This document shows positions 1,162 through 37,072 of a stretch of DNA of 43,322 nt, one piece after another. The DNA is from Octopus bimaculoides (taxonomy: Eukaryota). How positions within the stretch are numbered: the stretch's first letter is position 1; each line of letters opens with the position of its first letter. Below the pieces are notes generated by a model, which worked only from the letters and a program-made list of their open reading frames with translations, made no database searches and had not been told where the DNA came from. The stretch is from contig NC_068982.1 in NCBI RefSeq assembly GCF_001194135.2, positions 101,226,175 through 101,269,496 on the forward strand. Direction: 5' to 3'. A program made the position numbers and the translations under genes.

Positions 1162-2209
1162 ATGTGTATGTGCAAGCTTGCATACACAACAAGGGCCAGA
1201 GAATAAATTACAAGAAATATAAGAGATATAATAAAACAGAGAGGTTAAAAGAGGGGTATTAAAGAAGTAACATCTTTGTTTTTGCTGTAGTTCGTTATCT
1301 TTATGAATGTCTATATGTTTTTCTCAACATTTCGACCTGTCTTAATTGTAAAAGGAAACATAATAATGCGCACTCAAAGTCTAAAATCGCCCCACCATCA
1401 ACTTCAAAAACGCAAGTTGCAAAGAAGTATAAGGACTTTTATCACCGCAATAGGATATTACTGAGACAGCGGAGAATTTATTATAGCTACATAAACAGCA
1501 TAGACATAAAAGAAAAACAAAGATGACATAAAATTAATAGTTAAAAAGGTTTTTGAGATTTAAATCGAGATTAAAACAGAAAATTCGAATAAAAGAAGAA
1601 AGTACTATATGAAAGTGAAAAATGAAATAAAATAAAATAAAATAAACAGAAAAGAGAGAACGAAAGAAATGAAATTCCATAGAAATTTTGGTTGAAGGAA
1701 TTACTGTTCTAAAAGCAATAAAACAAATTTCCATTTGTAGAAACAACTATTCTTGGCAGTTATATATACAAACAAGTGTTTCTTTTAGTTTCTTGTCATA
1801 CAAGTAAGTATTTATAAATATCTCGTAAGAAAGAGGAATCTCGTTCAATCTTATTTTATAAGGTTATGTAATAAAATTTTTGCATTTATCTCTCGATGAT
1901 ACACCGAGGGGTCCATGAGATGAGGCTTGTGCTAATATAACATGGTTGACTTGTATATGAAAGCATTTCTACAAATATTGTCTCGATCCACGCACACCTA
2001 TCCAAATACATATTTAATATACAGAAGTGCTTGTGCGCTTGTGTCTATGATTTAGCACACACACACACACACACAAACACATATATATATTATATATATA
2101 TACACACACTCTATGTAAATATACTTATGTTTTTGGTTTTAAGTACGAAACAGTGTGTCTAATGTGTATGCAGATGTATAGACAGCTTCCTAGAATTATG
2201 TCTACATTC

Positions 2210-3176: not shown

Positions 3177-3699
3177 NNNNNNNNNNNNNNNNNNNNNNNN
3201 NNNNNNNNNNNNNNNNNNNNNNNNNNNNNNNNNNNNNNNNNNNNNNNNNNNNNNNNNNNNNNNNNNNNNNNNNNNNNNNNNNNNNNNNNNNNNNNNNNNN
3301 NNNNNNNNNNNNNNNNNNNNNNNNNNNNNNNNNNNNNNNNNNNNNNNNNNNNNNNNNNNNNNNNNNNNNNNNNNNNNNNNNNNNNNNNNNNNNNNNNNNN
3401 NNNNNNNNNNNNNNNNNNNNNNNNNNNNNNNNNNNNNNNNNNNNNNNNNNNNNNNNNNNNNNNNNNNNNNNNNNNNNNNNNNNNNNNNNNNNNNNNNNNN
3501 NNNNNNNNNNNNNNNNNNNNNNNNNNNNNNNNNNNNNNNNNNNNNNNNNNNNNNNNNNNNNNNNNNNNNNNNNNNNNNNNNNNNNNNNNNNNNNNNNNNN
3601 NNNNNNNNNNNNNNNNNNNNNNNNNNNNNNNNNNNNNNNNNNNNNNNNNNNNNNNNNNNNNNNNNNNNNNNNNNNNNNNNNNNNNNNNNNNNNNNNNNN

Positions 3700-3776
<77 letters not shown>

Positions 3777-3858
3777 TATATATATACACATATATATACA
3801 TATATATACACATATATATACGTATATACACACACATATATATATACATATATATATG

Positions 3859-3893
<35 letters not shown>

Positions 3894-3967
3894 CGTCTAC
3901 CTGGATGTTTTGTCCCTTTCTTGTATCACCTAACTGTCTTGATGTTTTGCGTTCTTGTCCCATTCTG

Positions 3968-4010
<43 letters not shown>

Positions 4011-4049
4011 GATCTCACGTGTGTGCGTGTTGTGTGTGTTGTGTGTCTG

Positions 4050-4230
4050 TGTTTGCCACCCTCCAACGCTTGACAACTAGTTTTGGTGTGTTTACGTCCC
4101 TGTGACAGAAAATGTAGTAAGCTTTAAAAAAAATAACATGTACTAGTGTCGATTCATTCGACTAAAAATTCTTCAAAGCAGTGTTCCAGCATGGCCGCAG
4201 TCTATTGACTAAAACAAGTAAAAGAAAATA
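4050..4230 (+). mobile_element. SINE 3' module (family D here), preceded by a TG-rich spacer
   Basis: CGCTTGACAAC..GTGTGTTTACGTCCC..CCAGCATGGCCGCAGTC..TGACTAAAACAAGTAAAAGA, matching copies at 16.9, 28.4, 41.5 and 43.0 kb. Confidence 0.85.
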
Positions 4231-4328
4231 TGATATTCCTGTGCATCTTTGATGCCAACAGATACCATATACATACATACAACAATGTATATCGTATCTG
4301 TTGGCATCAAAGAGGCACAGGTATATCA
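4231..4328. ncRNA. 98-nt near-perfect hairpin, candidate pri-miRNA or hairpin RNA
   Basis: Arms 4231-4274 and 4285-4328 pair at 41 of 44 positions, including a perfect 20-bp run TCTTTGATGCCAACAGATAC/GTATCTGTTGGCATCAAAGA, with a 10-nt loop. The hairpin is certain; RNA function is inferred. Confidence 0.45.
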
Positions 4329-4520
4329 GACGCACCTTGATTTCAGCAGTGCATATTCAAGAAAAAAAAAACCAACACATTTTGACTGCATTAAATCTCA
4401 TGCGAGGTTCATAGTTGCAGATACGACCTGAGTTTGTTGTTTGAGAAATTTTGGGGAAGGAAAAATGTGCGGTGTCACGTGTCAGACACACACATATGCA
4501 AGTGTTAATCAGAATCAGGA

Positions 4521-4933
4521 AATAATCTTTTCTACTCTAGGAACAATGCCCGAAATTTTTGGGGAGATGGCCAGTCGATTAGATCGACCCCAGTACGCAA
4601 CTGGTACTTAATTTATCGACCCCGAAAAAACGAAAGGCAAAGTCGACCTCGGCGGAATTTGAACTCAGAGCGTACGCTAAGCATTTCGCCCGGCGTGCAA
4701 ACGTTTCTTATTTCTTTATTGCCCACAAGGGGCTAAACATAGAGGGGACAAACAAGGACAGACAAAGGGATTAAGTCAACTACATCGAGCCCAGTGCGTA
4801 ACTGGTACTTAATTTATCGACCCCGAAAGGATGAAAGGATGAAACTCAGAACGTAACGGCAGACGAAATACCTATTTCGTTATTGCCCACAAGGGGCTAA
4901 ACATAGAGGAAACAAACAAGAACAGACGAACGG
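4521..4933 (-). mobile_element. Tandem or nested array of three tRNA-derived SINEs (family B here)
   Basis: Copies 4521-4708, 4709-4872 and 4873-4933 (cut by gap). Two show the core ACTGGTACTTAATTTATCGACCCCGAAA and B-box-like GAATTTGAACTC/GAAACTC; the third shows only the tail. Confidence 0.9.
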
Positions 4934-5244
4934 NNNNNNNNNNNNNNNNNNNNNNNNNNNNNNNNNNNNNNNNNNNNNNNNNNNNNNNNNNNNNNNNNNN
5001 NNNNNNNNNNNNNNNNNNNNNNNNNNNNNNNNNNNNNNNNNNNNNNNNNNNNNNNNNNNNNNNNNNNNNNNNNNNNNNNNNNNNNNNNNNNNNNNNNNNN
5101 NNNNNNNNNNNNNNNNNNNNNNNNNNNNNNNNNNNNNNNNNNNNNNNNNNNNNNNNNNNNNNNNNNNNNNNNNNNNNNNNNNNNNNNNNNNNNNNNNNNN
5201 NNNNNNNNNNNNNNNNNNNNNNNNNNNNNNNNNNNNNNNNNNNN

Positions 5245-8290: not shown

Positions 8291-8496
8291 ATATATATAT
8301 GTACATATATATATATACTTATATATATATATATATNNNNNNNNNNNNNNNNNNNNNNNNNNNNNNNNNNNNNNNNNNNNNNNNNNNNNNNNNNNNNNNN
8401 NNNNNNNNNNNNNNNNNNNNNNNNNNNNNNNNNNNNNNNNNNNNNNNNNNNNNNNNNNNNNNNNNNNNNNNNNNNNNNNNNNNNNNNNNNNNNNNN

Positions 8497-8800
8497 TACA
8501 CACCATACTAATCATGTCTGTCAGGCATGTGGAAGGGAGTGTGATTCAACAGGAGGACTTAAACGACACGCAAAGGTACATGGAGCCCAATTACAACAAA
8601 AGCCAGCTATTGCCAGTAAAGGTTTTGGATGCCAACTCTGTGCAAGACATTGTCGATCTTTGGCTGGGCTAAAAAGTCACATTCGATCACAGCACCGTTA
8701 AGTTAAGCTTCGTGTAATGGCCATACTCGATAACGAGGGGGCAGCCATCATGTATGTATGTATGTATGTATGTATGTATGTATGTATGTATGTATGTATG
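8497..8800 (+). mobile_element. 3' end of a LINE (RTE-like): ORF C-terminus with two C2H2 fingers, short 3' UTR, (TGTA)n tail
   Basis: Frame ending TAA at 8699-8701: CQACGRECDSTGGLKRHAKVH and CQLCARHCRSLAGLKSHIRSQH. About 49-nt UTR (GGCCATACTCGATAACGAGGGGGCAGCCATCA), then (TGTA)n 8751-8800. No TGEKP linker. The 5' part is lost in an N-gap. Confidence 0.75.
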
Positions 8801-14295: not shown

Positions 14296-14470
14296 GGCAG
14301 CGAGCTGGCAGAATCATTAGCAAGCCAGGAAAAATACTTAGCAGCAGTTCGTCTGCTTTTACGTTCTGAGTTCAAATGCCGCCGGGGTCGACTTTGCTTT
14401 TCGGTGTCGATGTAATCGACTTACCCACTCCTCCGAAATTGCTGGCCTTGTGCTAAATTTTGAAACCTCT
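14296..14470 (+). mobile_element. SINE family B with internal deletion
   Basis: GGCAGCGAGCTGGCAGAATCATTAGC (A box), GAGTTCAAATGCC (B box), GGGGTCGACTTTGC; lacks the central AAGTACCAG segment seen in other copies. Confidence 0.9.
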
Positions 14471-16783: not shown

Positions 16784-17085
16784 AAGCACTAGATAGTACT
16801 TCTGTGGCTATTAAGTTATCTTGACTCTTATTTCTAGTAATACTGGTGCTGATCAGTGCCTTTTGTCATTTTAGAAACGTATATATTTCTGCCTATATAT
16901 ACATGTGTGTGTGTGTTTGTGTGTCCCATCACTGGTGTCGGTGTGTTTATGTACCCGTAGAATAAGAACCCGGTTTAAAACAAGAACTAGGACCAATTCA
17001 TTCGAAAAAATTATTCAAGGCTGTGCCCCGGCACGGATGGCTGCAGTCTAATGACTGAAAACAAGTAAAATAAAGATAAAAGGTA
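16585..17085 (+). mobile_element. Composite SINE: A module, TA/TG spacer, D module
   Basis: A module 16585-16745 (GGCAACTTGGGCAAGTCTCTTCCACTATAAC..GAAAACTGAAAGAA), (TA)n plus about 130 bp plus (TG)n, D module about 16920-17085 (GCAGTCTAATGACTGAAAACAAGTAAAA). Confidence 0.8.
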
Positions 17086-21892: not shown

Positions 21893-22112
21893 TTGAGAGG
21901 ACAAAACCGTTAGCACGCCGGACAAAATGCTTAGTGGCACTTTCGTTCGCCTTTATGCTCTGTGTTCAAATTCCGTCGGGGTCGACTTTGGTTTTCATCC
22001 TTTCGGGGTCGATAAATTAAGTACCAGTTGTGTACTGGGGTCGATGTAAATAACTAGCCTCCTCCCACCAAAGTTTTCGGCCTTATGCCTATGCAGAAAA
22101 GATTATTATTAA
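21893..22112 (+). mobile_element. SINE family B (tail type 1)
   Basis: AAACCGTTAGCACGCCGGACAAAATGCTTAG..GTTCAAATTCC..CATCCTTTCGGGGTCGATAAATTAAGTACCAG..GGCCTTATGCCTATGCAGAAAAGATTATT. Confidence 0.92.
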
Positions 22113-22651
22113 CTACTGTGTCCTTTTTCCTTATACGTATATATACCCATTCGCACACAGATATCTGTATGCCCATACATACATACATGTATACATACAT
22201 ACATGTATGTATGTATGTATGTATGTATGTATGTATGTATGTATATTATGTATGTACGTATGCATGTATGAAGGTAGGTAAGTGTGTATGTATGATTATT
22301 CTTTTCACCGGAGTGTGGCCTACATATTGTCATTTCATCAAGCAACACACTCAGTAGTTGGAGGTGTATTGAAGGCAAGGGTCAAAGCAGAGCAGCCAAC
22401 ATTATGTTCGTTTATGATTGAACGCGTGTCATGTGACTGAACATGTTGTTGCAAGAGCCAAGGGGGAGTGTTCTTTGTGTGGATGAATGAGGGGAGAGAA
22501 CTACAGCGCTTTGAGGGAATGGCAAGTGATGGATAGTGGCATCTAGTCAATGGACAGTGGCAGGTTAGATGAGATCATGATCTCGAAGACAATGAGATGT
22601 CAAGTAAAAAGAGAGGCGAGTTTTGAAAGAGAGTGGGAGGAGAAAGGGCGA

Positions 22652-28113: not shown

Positions 28114-28424
28114 ACACACACTTGCACGTGAGGCCGTCTAGCATCCTATACATATGCGTAAACGCTTGCATAAAAAATCCTTCACTTACATCTCTGTAGA
28201 GTGAGCTTTGATAAGCCGGCATTGCATGCGTTCCCATACGTGCAATATTACCCCTCCCCCACTCGAAAAAAAAAAACATGCTACAGACATAGAAAACCAA
28301 AACACTACTCGACAAATGCCCTACCATGCGTTGCATCAGTTAAGCCACAGTAAACTGAGTTTTAGAGTTTTGATTTACGAATGAGAGCAATTTATGAAAC
28401 AAAACTAAATTCATATATATATCT

Positions 28425-28837
28425 CTTTTCTTTTTATTTGTTTCAGTCATTTGATTGCGGCCATGCTGGAGCACCGCCTTTGGTCAAACAAAATCGACCC
28501 CCCAGGCCTTATTCTTTGTAAGCCTAGTACTTATTCTATCGGACTCTTTTGCTGAACCGTTAAGTTACGGCGACGTGAACACACCAACGTCGGTTGTCAA
28601 GCGACGGTGGGGTGGACAAACACTGACACACAAACATGCACAGACAGACACACATACACACACACACACACACACATATATTATATACGACGGGCTTCTT
28701 TAAATTTCCGTCTACCAAATCCACTCACAAGGCTTTGTTCGGCCCGAGGCTATAGTAGAAGATACTTGCCCCAAGGTGCCACTTAGTGGGACTGAACCCG
28801 GAACCATGTGGTTGGTAAGCAAGCTACTTACTACATC
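28425..28837 (-). mobile_element. Near full-length composite SINE (A module, (TG)n spacer, D module)
   Basis: A module 28683-28837, CA-rich spacer about 28620-28682, D module 28425-28620. Closely matches 42829-43150. Confidence 0.92.
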
Positions 28838-29124: not shown

Positions 29125-29315
29125 TTCAAATTTTGGCACAAAATTTCGAGGTGGAGTGGGGTGGAGGTCTTGTCGATTACACCGACTCCCAGAATCCAAC
29201 TGGTATTTACTTAATCGGTCCCGAAAAGATAAAAGACAAACTCGACCTCGGTGGAGTTTGAACTCAGAACGTAAAGACGGACGAAATGCCGAAAACGATC
29301 TTGTTAGCTAGCAGC
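29125..29315 (-). mobile_element. SINE family B
   Basis: GTCGATTACACCGAC..AACTGGTATTTACTTAATCGGTCCCGAAAAGATAAAAGACAAACTCGACCTCGGTGGAGTTTGAACTCAGAACGTAAAGACGGACGAAATGCC. Confidence 0.88.
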
Positions 29316-36841: not shown

Positions 36842-37072
36842 GCGGCGAACTGGCAGAAACGTTAGCACGACGGGCGAAGTGCTTAGCGGTATTTCGTCTG
36901 CCGCTACGTTCTGAGTTCAAATTCCGCTGAGGTCGACTTTGCCTTTCATCCTTTCGGGGTCGATTAAATAAGTACCAGTTACGCACTGGGGTCGATATAA
37001 TCGACTTAATCCGTTTGTCTGTCCTTGTTTGTCCCCTCTGTGTGTAGCCCCTAATGGGCAGTAAAGAAATAA
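36841..37072 (+). mobile_element. Full-length, young-looking SINE family B (tail type 2) inserted in (GATA)n
   Basis: GGCGGCGAACTGGCAGAAACGTTAGC..GAGTTCAAATTCC..GCCTTTCATCCTTTCGGGGTCGATTAAATAAGTACCAG..TAGCCCCTAATGGGCAGTAAAGAAATA, with (GATA)n on both sides. Confidence 0.95.

What the first reader, a model, noticed from the sequence alone, without database searches (positions are those of the whole stretch)
4231..4336. 98-nt near-perfect hairpin with canonical pri-miRNA geometry
Seen: 44-nt arms pair at 41 of 44 positions (mismatches T.T, A.G, C.C) around a 10-nt loop, by far the strongest non-microsatellite inverted repeat noticed in the window. If the 5' Drosha cut precedes A4245, a 22-nt duplex forms with 2-nt 3' overhangs at both ends (5p 4245-4266 AUCUUUGAUGCCAACAGAUACC, 3p 4295-4316 UAUCUGUUGGCAUCAAAGAGGC). 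A basal UG then sits at -14 (4231-4232) and a CNNC (CACC, 4333-4336) at +17. Established: these are known pri-miRNA processing determinants, and coleoid cephalopods carry many lineage-specific miRNAs and heavy ADAR editing of dsRNA. Inference: a young miRNA, endo-siRNA hairpin or editing substrate. Caveats: the cut site was chosen to fit the motifs, the apical segment (28 nt) is long, and a tiny MITE or fold-back would look similar.
Basis: partly seen in the sequence, partly recalled or inferred. Interest (0 to 1): 0.72.

Follow-up and report, generated by a model that had tools for sequence, protein, structure and literature searches.

The report
Lone 98-base DNA palindrome beside a SINE
A real 98-base near-perfect palindrome sits just after a SINE-like repeat; it is most likely a young local inverted duplication, and nothing available here shows that it is a working microRNA gene.

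Summary
Positions 4231-4328 form 44-nt arms paired at 41 of 44 positions around a 10-nt loop. RNA folding energy is -61 kcal/mol on the + strand and -64 on the - strand (z about -12). It is the only complex-sequence hairpin of this strength in the window.

The microRNA reading could not be tested, because no small-RNA, transcript or cephalopod genome data were reachable.
- For it: UG sits at the stem base, CACC lies 17 nt after the proposed 3p cut, and the proposed precursor is 72 nt.
- Against it: the predicted stem is a continuous 44 nt, outside the 33-39 nt optimum measured in mammals. The CACC is predicted to be base-paired. The hairpin is far more perfect than typical animal microRNA precursors. 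No Rfam family reaches its threshold. Both strands fold equally well.
- The UG and CNNC combination arises by chance in about 1.4-3.4% of placements, and the cut site was chosen to fit.

The hairpin begins where a SINE-like repeat ends. Its apex looks like the (ATAC)n/(GTAT)n microsatellite palindromes common in this window. My best reading (about 0.5) is a one-step inverted duplication, either a replication template switch or fold-back repair, with no function. A palindromic MITE is the main rival (about 0.2). A processed microRNA has a probability of about 0.05. Interest is low.

The parts
4231..4274 (.). Left arm of the palindrome (44 nt). The first 6 nt (TGATAT) are continuous with the AT-rich tail of the upstream SINE-like repeat.
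4275..4284 (.). 10-nt loop or spacer (ACATACAACA).
4285..4328 (.). Right arm (44 nt), the reverse complement of the left arm at 41 of 44 positions.
4246..4265 (.). Perfect 20-bp core helix, pairing with 4294-4313. It is bounded by the A.G and C.C mismatches. This is complex, non-repetitive sequence found nowhere else in the window.
4267..4292 (.). Apical part: an AT-rich 8-bp helix (ATATACAT/ATGTATAT) plus the loop. It resembles the (ATAC)n/(GTAT)n microsatellite palindromes seen elsewhere in the window. Pair probabilities are 0.92-0.998.
4333..4336 (+). CACC, a CNNC motif 5 nt from the stem base and 17 nt from the proposed 3p cut. It is predicted to pair with 4349-4352 in a small downstream hairpin.
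4020..4230 (+). Context: the 3' part of a SINE-like repeat whose A-rich tail ends where the palindrome begins. At least four other copies lie in the window, and none carries the hairpin.

Best explanation
This is a young, single-locus DNA palindrome. It was probably made in one mutational step that copied about 35-44 nt of neighbouring sequence in reverse complement. The step would be a replication template switch or fold-back repair, nucleated at a short AT-rich ATATACAT/ATGTATAT palindrome of the (ATAC)n/(GTAT)n microsatellite type, next to the tail of a SINE-like repeat. Three later substitutions, or errors at birth, account for the three mismatches. It most likely has no function. If the locus is transcribed, either strand would fold into a 44-bp near-perfect duplex that enzymes acting on double-stranded RNA (ADAR, Dicer, perhaps Drosha) could act on, but that would be a by-product.

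Shown: the palindrome, its uniqueness in the window, its position at the SINE tail, and its microsatellite-like apex.
Inferred: the template-switch origin, which arm is the source, and neutrality.
For: - The arms are 10 nt apart and 93% complementary over 44 nt of complex sequence. That cannot arise by chance, so a duplication event is required.
- The arm sequence occurs only at this locus in the window, even with sensitive searches.
- The hairpin starts where the SINE-like repeat ends. In the two copies with the best-preserved 3' ends (42995-43177 and 28654-28419) the tail runs into AT or ATAC-type simple sequence. TGATAT at the arm base looks like such tail sequence, so its mirror ATATCA is probably the copy.
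- AT-rich (ATAC/GTAT-type) microsatellite palindromes are frequent in this window, at 22174-22241, 38921-38974, 39702-39849 and 43168-43311. They would offer the short inverted repeats that nucleate template switching.
- Arm divergence (7%) is much lower than divergence among SINE copies (about 18-27%), so the event is younger than the SINE insertion.
- No non-palindromic target-site duplication is present.
- Template switching is documented to create perfect hairpins of 15-83 nt in a single event. It produced tens of thousands of them in primates, of which about 1% became annotated miRNAs (PMC10710096).
Against: - No outgroup or ancestral sequence was available, so the event itself is not shown and the source arm is not identified.
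- A palindromic MITE inserted into an (AT)n tract would look the same. The candidate duplications AT, TA and ATAT are themselves palindromic and so cannot be judged.
- Genome-wide copy number is unknown.
- UG at the base and CNNC at +17 are mildly unexpected by chance (1.4-3.4% over both strands), and they fit a processed hairpin.
Confidence: 0.5

Rival explanations
1. It is one copy of a short palindromic non-autonomous DNA transposon (a MITE or fold-back type). Such an element consists almost entirely of two terminal inverted repeats. Human Made1 is an example: 80 bp, two 37-bp TIRs and 6 bp between them. Here it would have inserted into the AT-rich tail of the SINE.
For: The size and architecture, 44-nt arms with a 10-nt spacer, closely parallel Made1 (PMC1784062). 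AT, TA or ATAT flank possible element boundaries, which is compatible with a TA or 4-bp duplication in an (AT)n target. The window is repeat-rich with several SINE-like families. One copy in about 38 kb of resolved sequence does not exclude a family of thousands of copies in a gigabase genome.
Against: There is no second copy or single-arm relative in the window. No non-palindromic duplication is present. The pairing extends 2-5 bp beyond each candidate TSD, so the TSD itself would lie inside the palindrome. The termini resemble no TIR consensus I can recall (from memory, not tested). Exact-pattern scans of the metagenome, viral and prokaryote collections found nothing, but those collections are not expected to hold this organism.
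Confidence: 0.22
2. It is a young, lineage-specific small-RNA gene. A transcript folds into the hairpin. Drosha cuts before A4245 and after C4316. Dicer then releases a 22-nt duplex (5p 4245-4266, 3p 4295-4316). Alternatively Dicer alone makes siRNAs from the near-perfect duplex. The origin could still be a template switch or a MITE.
For: - The hairpin is very stable.
- UG is at -14/-13 and CNNC at +17 from the proposed cuts, the positions documented for human pri-miRNAs (PMC6004053). CNNC is 5 nt from the stem base, within the enriched 5-6 nt range (PMC5340965).
- The proposed precursor is 72 nt, under the <80 nt limit seen in mollusks. The 3p starts with a paired U and the 5p with a mismatched A, as is typical for 3p-mature loci (PMC11701709).
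- The stretch from the base to the C.C mismatch is exactly 35 nt.
- The joint motif chance is 0.7-1.7% per strand.
Against: - No expression, processing or conservation evidence could be obtained.
- The predicted stem is 44 nt, not 35, because the apical helix has p >= 0.92. That lies outside the 33-39 nt optimum. For the 44-nt stem of MIR579, shortening to 37 nt improved processing and an added CNNC helped only the shortened form.
- The CNNC is predicted to be paired.
- There is no apical UGU at the 5p/loop junction.
- The free-energy index (MFEI) is 1.68; from memory, animal precursors are nearer 1. Pairing is 93%, so this is 'too perfect', as expected of fresh inverted repeats.
- No Rfam family reaches threshold, and the arm core is absent from the held supplements of the octopus miRNA study, although those files carry no full miRNA sequences.
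- Both strands fold equally well.
- No promoter or host gene was identified.
- The base rate for such hairpins becoming miRNAs is about 1%.
- The cut site was chosen to fit the motifs.
Confidence: 0.05
3. It is an assembly or library artefact: a fold-back chimera, or a graph traversal through a palindromic microsatellite that wrote one flank twice in opposite orientations.
For: The window is a short-read scaffold with 16 N gaps, nearly all bordered by simple repeats on at least one side. The apex of the hairpin is microsatellite-like.
Against: The hairpin lies mid-contig (contig 3700-4933), about 530 and 600 nt from the nearest gaps. Unique, unrelated sequence continues on both sides. The arms differ at 3 positions, whereas an artefactual re-traversal would give identical arms. 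A 98-nt structure should be spanned by single reads, assuming typical short-read lengths of 100-150 nt; the read length of this assembly is not known.
Confidence: 0.04

Closest known systems
Template-switch-mutation (TSM) hairpins, as described in primates (Monttinen, Frilander and Loytynoja 2023, PMC10710096)
   Same: A short inverted copy lies next to its source and gives near-perfect pairing for a whole stem in one event. The size is within the reported range (15-83 nt). The locus is single-copy. Most such hairpins are not miRNAs.
   Different: The locus sits in repeat and microsatellite sequence, which that study excluded. The organism is different and was not verified.
Made1 MITE / hsa-mir-548 family (Piriyapongsa and Jordan 2007, PMC1784062)
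   Same: A nearly perfect palindrome of about 80-100 bp, made of two long inverted repeats and a very short spacer. It forms a highly stable RNA hairpin if transcribed.
   Different: Made1 is a dispersed multi-copy family related to the mariner-like element Hsmar1. Here only one copy is seen, no informative duplication is present, and no related autonomous element is known.
Canonical animal pri-miRNA (Microprocessor substrate; MirGeneDB criteria)
   Same: A stem-loop with UG at the base and CNNC about 17 nt from the putative cut. A 22-nt duplex with 2-nt overhangs can be drawn, and the precursor is under 80 nt.
   Different: The stem is 44 nt rather than about 35. It has almost no bulges or mismatches. 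The CNNC is predicted to be paired and there is no apical UGU. It resembles no known family, and there is no read evidence and no conservation evidence.
Drosophila-type hairpin RNAs (hpRNA endo-siRNA loci)
   Same: A near-perfect inverted repeat that would give Dicer a fully paired substrate.
   Different: From memory, hpRNAs have stems of hundreds of bp and target a gene from which they derive. This stem is 44 bp, and no complementary target exists in the window.

Membership tests
Canonical animal miRNA gene (MirGeneDB criteria) | Hairpin with at least 16 complementary nt between two 20-26-nt arms and a loop of at least 8 nt | tested here: met
   For the proposed 4245-4266 / 4295-4316 duplex, 19 of 20 duplex positions pair and the inter-arm segment is 28 nt (criteria text).
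Canonical animal miRNA gene (MirGeneDB criteria) | Small-RNA reads from both arms with 2-nt Drosha and Dicer offsets and homogeneous 5' ends | not testable with these tools
   No small-RNA data are reachable. This is the defining test.
Canonical animal miRNA gene (MirGeneDB criteria) | Conservation in at least one further species, or sequence membership of a known family | tested here: not met
   No Rfam family reaches its gathering score in the whole window. Sub-threshold hits score 31-39 bits against cut-offs of 67-245 and match on structure only. The arm core is absent from the held supplements of PMC9699675, but those files carry no full miRNA sequences. Orthologues in other species could not be searched.
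Canonical animal miRNA gene (MirGeneDB criteria) | Microprocessor-compatible stem of about 35 bp (33-39 nt) between single-stranded flanks and an open apical loop | tested here: not met
   The predicted stem is a continuous 44 nt. The apical 8-bp helix has pair probabilities of 0.92-0.998. The optimum and the improvement when the 44-nt stem of MIR579 is shortened come from mammalian assays, so this is a preference and not proven for this organism. The stem is 35 nt only if the apical helix is counted as loop.
Canonical animal miRNA gene (MirGeneDB criteria) | Auxiliary motifs: basal UG, single-stranded CNNC at +16 to +18, apical UGU | tested here: inconclusive
   UG and CNNC are present at the right distances, with a chance rate of 0.7-1.7% per strand. 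The CNNC is predicted to be paired. There is no UGU at the 5p/loop junction. Whether the motifs matter in this taxon was not verified.
Palindromic MITE (Made1-like) | Multiple dispersed copies in the genome | tested here: inconclusive
   There is only one copy in the 43-kb window. The source genome could not be searched, and scans of other collections are uninformative.
Palindromic MITE (Made1-like) | Target-site duplication flanking the terminal inverted repeats | tested here: inconclusive
   Only AT, TA, ATAT and GC are found. Each is its own reverse complement, so each is expected inside any palindrome. There is no duplication at the outer boundary 4231/4328.
Template-switch-born hairpin | An inverted copy of at least 15 nt lying next to its source sequence | tested here: met
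   The arms are 44 nt, 10 nt apart and 93% complementary. The threshold is taken from PMC10710096.
Template-switch-born hairpin | An ancestral or outgroup sequence that lacks the inverted copy and is explained better by one switch than by point changes | not testable with these tools
   No related genome is available.
hpRNA / endo-siRNA hairpin | A long inverted repeat (hundreds of bp) with a complementary target gene | tested here: not met
   The stem is 44 bp. No other sequence in the window is complementary to the arms. Genome-wide targets were not testable.

The most novel reading that the evidence does not exclude
The hairpin is a new microRNA or short hairpin-siRNA gene caught soon after birth. 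It would have been created in one step by a template switch at a microsatellite palindrome on the tail of a SINE, and would already carry a basal UG and a CNNC at working distances. That would be a non-primate example of de novo small-RNA gene birth by template switching, in a lineage said to have expanded its miRNA set.
Probability: 0.04. Interest if true: 0.45.

Novelty: new member of a known kind. Interest (0 to 1): 0.15.

Why it matters
As it stands it matters little. Short near-perfect palindromes are a common by-product of replication errors and transposon activity in large repeat-rich genomes, and about 99% of them never become small-RNA genes. If small-RNA reads showed clean processing, the locus would be a tidy example of how a miRNA-like hairpin can arise in a single mutation next to a retroposon tail. 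It would also be a natural ADAR substrate in an animal known for heavy RNA editing. For genome scans, the useful lesson is that a hairpin can match pri-miRNA motif positions by a post hoc choice of cut site at a rate of a few percent.

Tried and rejected
- Rfam: the whole window at gathering thresholds gave no match. A permissive scan of 4100-4460 gave only structure-driven, far sub-threshold hits to miRNA families on both strands. I rejected these as evidence of membership.
- Octopus miRNA study (PMC9699675): I searched its supplements for the arm core and for six candidate seed-match 8-mers. Nothing was found, but the held files lack full miRNA sequences and some are truncated, so this is uninformative.
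- Full-text search of the paper library for the arm core and the SINE core found nothing.
- Exact-pattern scans for both arm cores with a variable loop in metagenome, viral and prokaryotic genome collections, and for the 20-mer core in metagenomes, found nothing. These collections are not expected to contain the source organism.
- BLAST against plasmids and phages found nothing.
- I tried to reach eukaryotic assemblies through proteins. Exact look-ups of four window ORFs found none on record. Homology searches with the ORF spanning the hairpin and SINE tail and with a C2H2 zinc-finger ORF found no candidates. So the organism, copy number and orthologues stayed out of reach.
- A Pfam scan of ten ORFs to find a host gene matched only the zinc-finger fragment.
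- tRNA search for Pol III heads found none. Pol III read-through from either neighbouring SINE looks unlikely. The left copy has an internal deletion and a TTTT at 4081-4084. On the minus strand, A-runs at about 4462-4466 and 4361-4371 would terminate transcription before it reached the hairpin (read from the sequence).
- A weak similarity of the hairpin to 22160-22216 turned out to be shared ATAC microsatellite only.
- A possible SINE target-site duplication (ATGAT) that would have marked the left arm as ancestral did not line up with the repeat's 5' boundary, so I dropped it.

Full report
**What is there.** Positions 4231-4328 are a 98-nt near-perfect palindrome. The arms are 4231-4274 and 4285-4328 and the loop is 4275-4284. 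Forty-one of 44 positions pair, and the mismatches are T4237.T4322, A4245.G4314 and C4266.C4293. This gives helices of 6, 7, 20 and 8 bp. The + strand RNA folds at -61.2 kcal/mol (z -12.2) and the - strand at -64.2 (z -12.8). As DNA it folds at -40.2 (z -13.2). No shuffle came close. My own scans of the window for hairpins gave it a score of 35. With loops up to 80 nt, every other hairpin scoring 16 or more was a microsatellite. With loops up to 40 nt, the next complex-sequence hairpin scored 12 and block-shuffled controls never exceeded 11.

**Surroundings.** The window is a short-read scaffold. It holds 5,550 N in 16 gaps, nearly all bordered by simple repeats on at least one side, and is about 36% G+C. 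The hairpin lies in the middle of contig 3700-4933.

- Immediately to its left, 4020-4230 is the 3' part of a SINE-like repeat. Other copies lie at 42995-43177 (+), 28654-28419 (-), 16979-17074 (+) and 41581-41644 (+).
- The better-preserved copies end in ...GCAGTC(T/A)A(A/T)TGACT(G/A)AAAC, followed by an A-rich tail. In the two best-preserved copies (42995-43177 and 28654-28419) the tail then runs into AT or ATAC-type simple sequence. None carries the hairpin.
- The hairpin starts exactly where this tail ends. Its first six bases (TGATAT) look like tail sequence.
- To the right, 4329-4520 is unique in the window. From 4521, two copies of a second SINE-like family follow.
- No gene, exon, tRNA or Rfam RNA was found nearby.
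- The organism could not be verified with these tools. From memory the repeats resemble octopus SINEs, but that is a recollection and not a result.

**Copy number and relatives.** The arm sequence occurs only at this locus in the window, even with word size 7. The one weak similarity, to 22160-22216, is shared ATAC microsatellite. Searches outside the window found nothing. I tried metagenome, viral and prokaryote collections, plasmids, phages, the paper library, and the supplements of the octopus miRNA study. None of these can be expected to contain this genome, so genome-wide copy number and orthologues remain unknown. Attempts to reach eukaryotic assemblies through window-encoded ORFs failed.

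**Testing the miRNA reading.** Some features fit.

- With a 5p cut before A4245, UG falls at -14/-13 and CNNC at +17. These are the positions documented for human pri-miRNAs (PMC6004053).
- The CNNC is 5 nt from the stem base, inside the enriched 5-6 nt range (PMC5340965).
- The 72-nt precursor is under the <80 nt seen in mollusks. A paired 5' U on the 3p arm and a mismatched 5' A on the 5p arm match the tendencies of 3p-mature loci (PMC11701709).
- The stretch from the base to the C.C mismatch is exactly 35 nt.

Other features do not fit.

- The apical 8-bp helix is predicted with probabilities of 0.92-0.998, so the predicted stem is a continuous 44 nt. In mammalian assays the optimum is 33-39 nt. 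For MIR579, whose stem is 44 nt, an added CNNC gave no gain, shortening the stem to 37 nt gave a mild gain, and the two changes together gave a larger one.
- In a 160-nt context the CACC is predicted to pair with 4349-4352 (p about 0.93), whereas the motif is described as lying in the single-stranded 3' segment.
- There is no UGU at the 5p/loop junction.
- Pairing is 93% and the free-energy index (MFEI) is 1.68; from memory, animal precursors are nearer 1. This is the signature of a fresh inverted repeat.
- Both strands fold equally well.
- No Rfam family reaches threshold. The permissive hits score 31-39 bits against cut-offs of 67-245 and match on structure only.
- Using the window's own sequence as background, UG at the base plus CNNC at the right distance occurs in 0.7% of placements per strand with the narrow window and 1.7% with the broad window. 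That is 1.4-3.4% over both strands, and the cut site was chosen to fit.

The defining tests are reads from both arms with 2-nt offsets, and conservation. Neither can be run here.

**Base rate.** In the primate lineage, template switching produced 6,054 hairpins of miRNA-like size in genic regions, and 0.9% of them are annotated in miRBase. Fewer are in MirGeneDB: 18 of 111 template-switch miRBase loci (PMC10710096). I start from a prior below 1%. I allow a moderate boost for the two motifs and a penalty for the long stem and the occluded CNNC. That puts a truly processed miRNA or siRNA locus at about 5%.

**Origin.** A 44-nt complex sequence repeated in reverse complement 10 nt away requires a duplication event. 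Two known processes make such objects.

(a) A replication template switch or fold-back repair copies adjacent sequence in reverse complement in one step. Several things favour this.
- The locus is single-copy in the window.
- The apex (ATATACAT ... ATGTATAT around an ATAC-rich loop) has the same character as the microsatellite palindromes that are frequent here, at 22174-22241, 38921-38974, 39702-39849 and 43168-43311. These would provide the short inverted repeat that nucleates switching.
- The outermost arm bases appear to be SINE-tail sequence, and their mirror image appears on the far side.
- Arm divergence (7%) is far below divergence among SINE copies (about 18-27%), so the event post-dates the SINE.
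- There is no informative target-site duplication.

[quoted passage not shown] This cannot be excluded. AT, TA and ATAT flank possible boundaries, but each is its own reverse complement and is expected inside any palindrome. One copy in 38 kb says little about a gigabase genome.

An assembly artefact is unlikely. The hairpin is mid-contig, unrelated unique sequence lies on both sides, and the arms differ at three positions.

**Mechanism, committed.** The most likely account (about 0.5) is a young local inverted duplication with no function. If the locus is transcribed, it would form a 44-bp duplex open to ADAR and Dicer as a by-product. A MITE copy is at about 0.2, a functional small-RNA locus of either origin at about 0.05, and an artefact at about 0.04. 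The remainder is unassigned.

**Transcription.** No promoter is evident. Pol III read-through from the left SINE copy is unlikely because that copy has a 26-nt internal deletion and a TTTT at 4081-4084. Read-through from the right SINE on the minus strand would meet T-runs (A-runs on the + strand at about 4462-4466 and 4361-4371) before it reached the hairpin (read).

**Comparison and novelty.** The locus behaves like a template-switch hairpin and looks like a Made1-type palindrome. Membership of the miRNA class is not established, and one processing preference (stem length) is not met under the predicted structure. It is a new instance of a known, common kind of sequence feature. Interest is low (0.15). 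The most novel reading still open is a newborn miRNA made by template switching at a SINE tail. That has a probability of about 0.04 and moderate interest if true.

Noticed in passing
window 8497-8701 (+): The end of an ORF carries two C2H2 zinc fingers (Pfam zf-C2H2 family hits). It is cut upstream by the N gap at 8337-8496. No homologue turned up in the large protein database. It could be a gene fragment or a transposon protein tail.
   Followed up: partly
window 4020-4230, 42995-43177, 28419-28654, 16979-17074, 41581-41644: A SINE-like repeat family with a conserved ...CCAGCATGGCCGCAGTC...GACTGAAACAAATAAAAGAA 3' region. In the two best-preserved copies the tail runs into AT or ATAC-type simple sequence. 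The copy next to the hairpin has a roughly 26-nt internal deletion.
   Followed up: partly
window 4521-4933; also 21954-22107, 36855-37006, 29172-29273, 14360-14451: A second SINE-like family. Two adjacent copies lie just right of the hairpin. On the minus strand it has a tRNA-like GAGTTCAAATTCC (B-box-like) segment, although ARAGORN calls no tRNA.
   Followed up: no
window 4222-4228 and 4359-4365: A 7-nt direct repeat AAGAAAA brackets the hairpin plus 30 nt of right flank, and the second copy leads into an A10 run. It could mark an insertion into a poly(A) tail, but in such A-rich sequence it is probably chance.
   Followed up: partly
window 4332-4352: A small predicted hairpin (GCAC...GUGC, p about 0.93) directly downstream of the big one would sequester the CNNC motif.
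   Followed up: yes
window 22174-22241, 38921-38974, 39702-39849, 43168-43311: AT-rich microsatellite tracts that switch strand sense, with ATAC-type units giving way to GTAT-type units, and so form long low-complexity palindromes. They recur in this window and are possible hotspots for fold-back or template-switch events.
   Followed up: partly
window, all 16 N runs (for example 3177-3699, 4934-5244): Nearly every assembly gap is bordered by simple repeats (CA, TA, GA and similar) on at least one side; the gap at 40367-40683 is the exception. The scaffold therefore under-represents these tracts, and distances across gaps are estimates.
   Followed up: yes
window 2006-2101: A second, much weaker complex-sequence inverted repeat: 39-nt arms with many mismatches, an 18-nt loop and a score of 12.
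   Followed up: no
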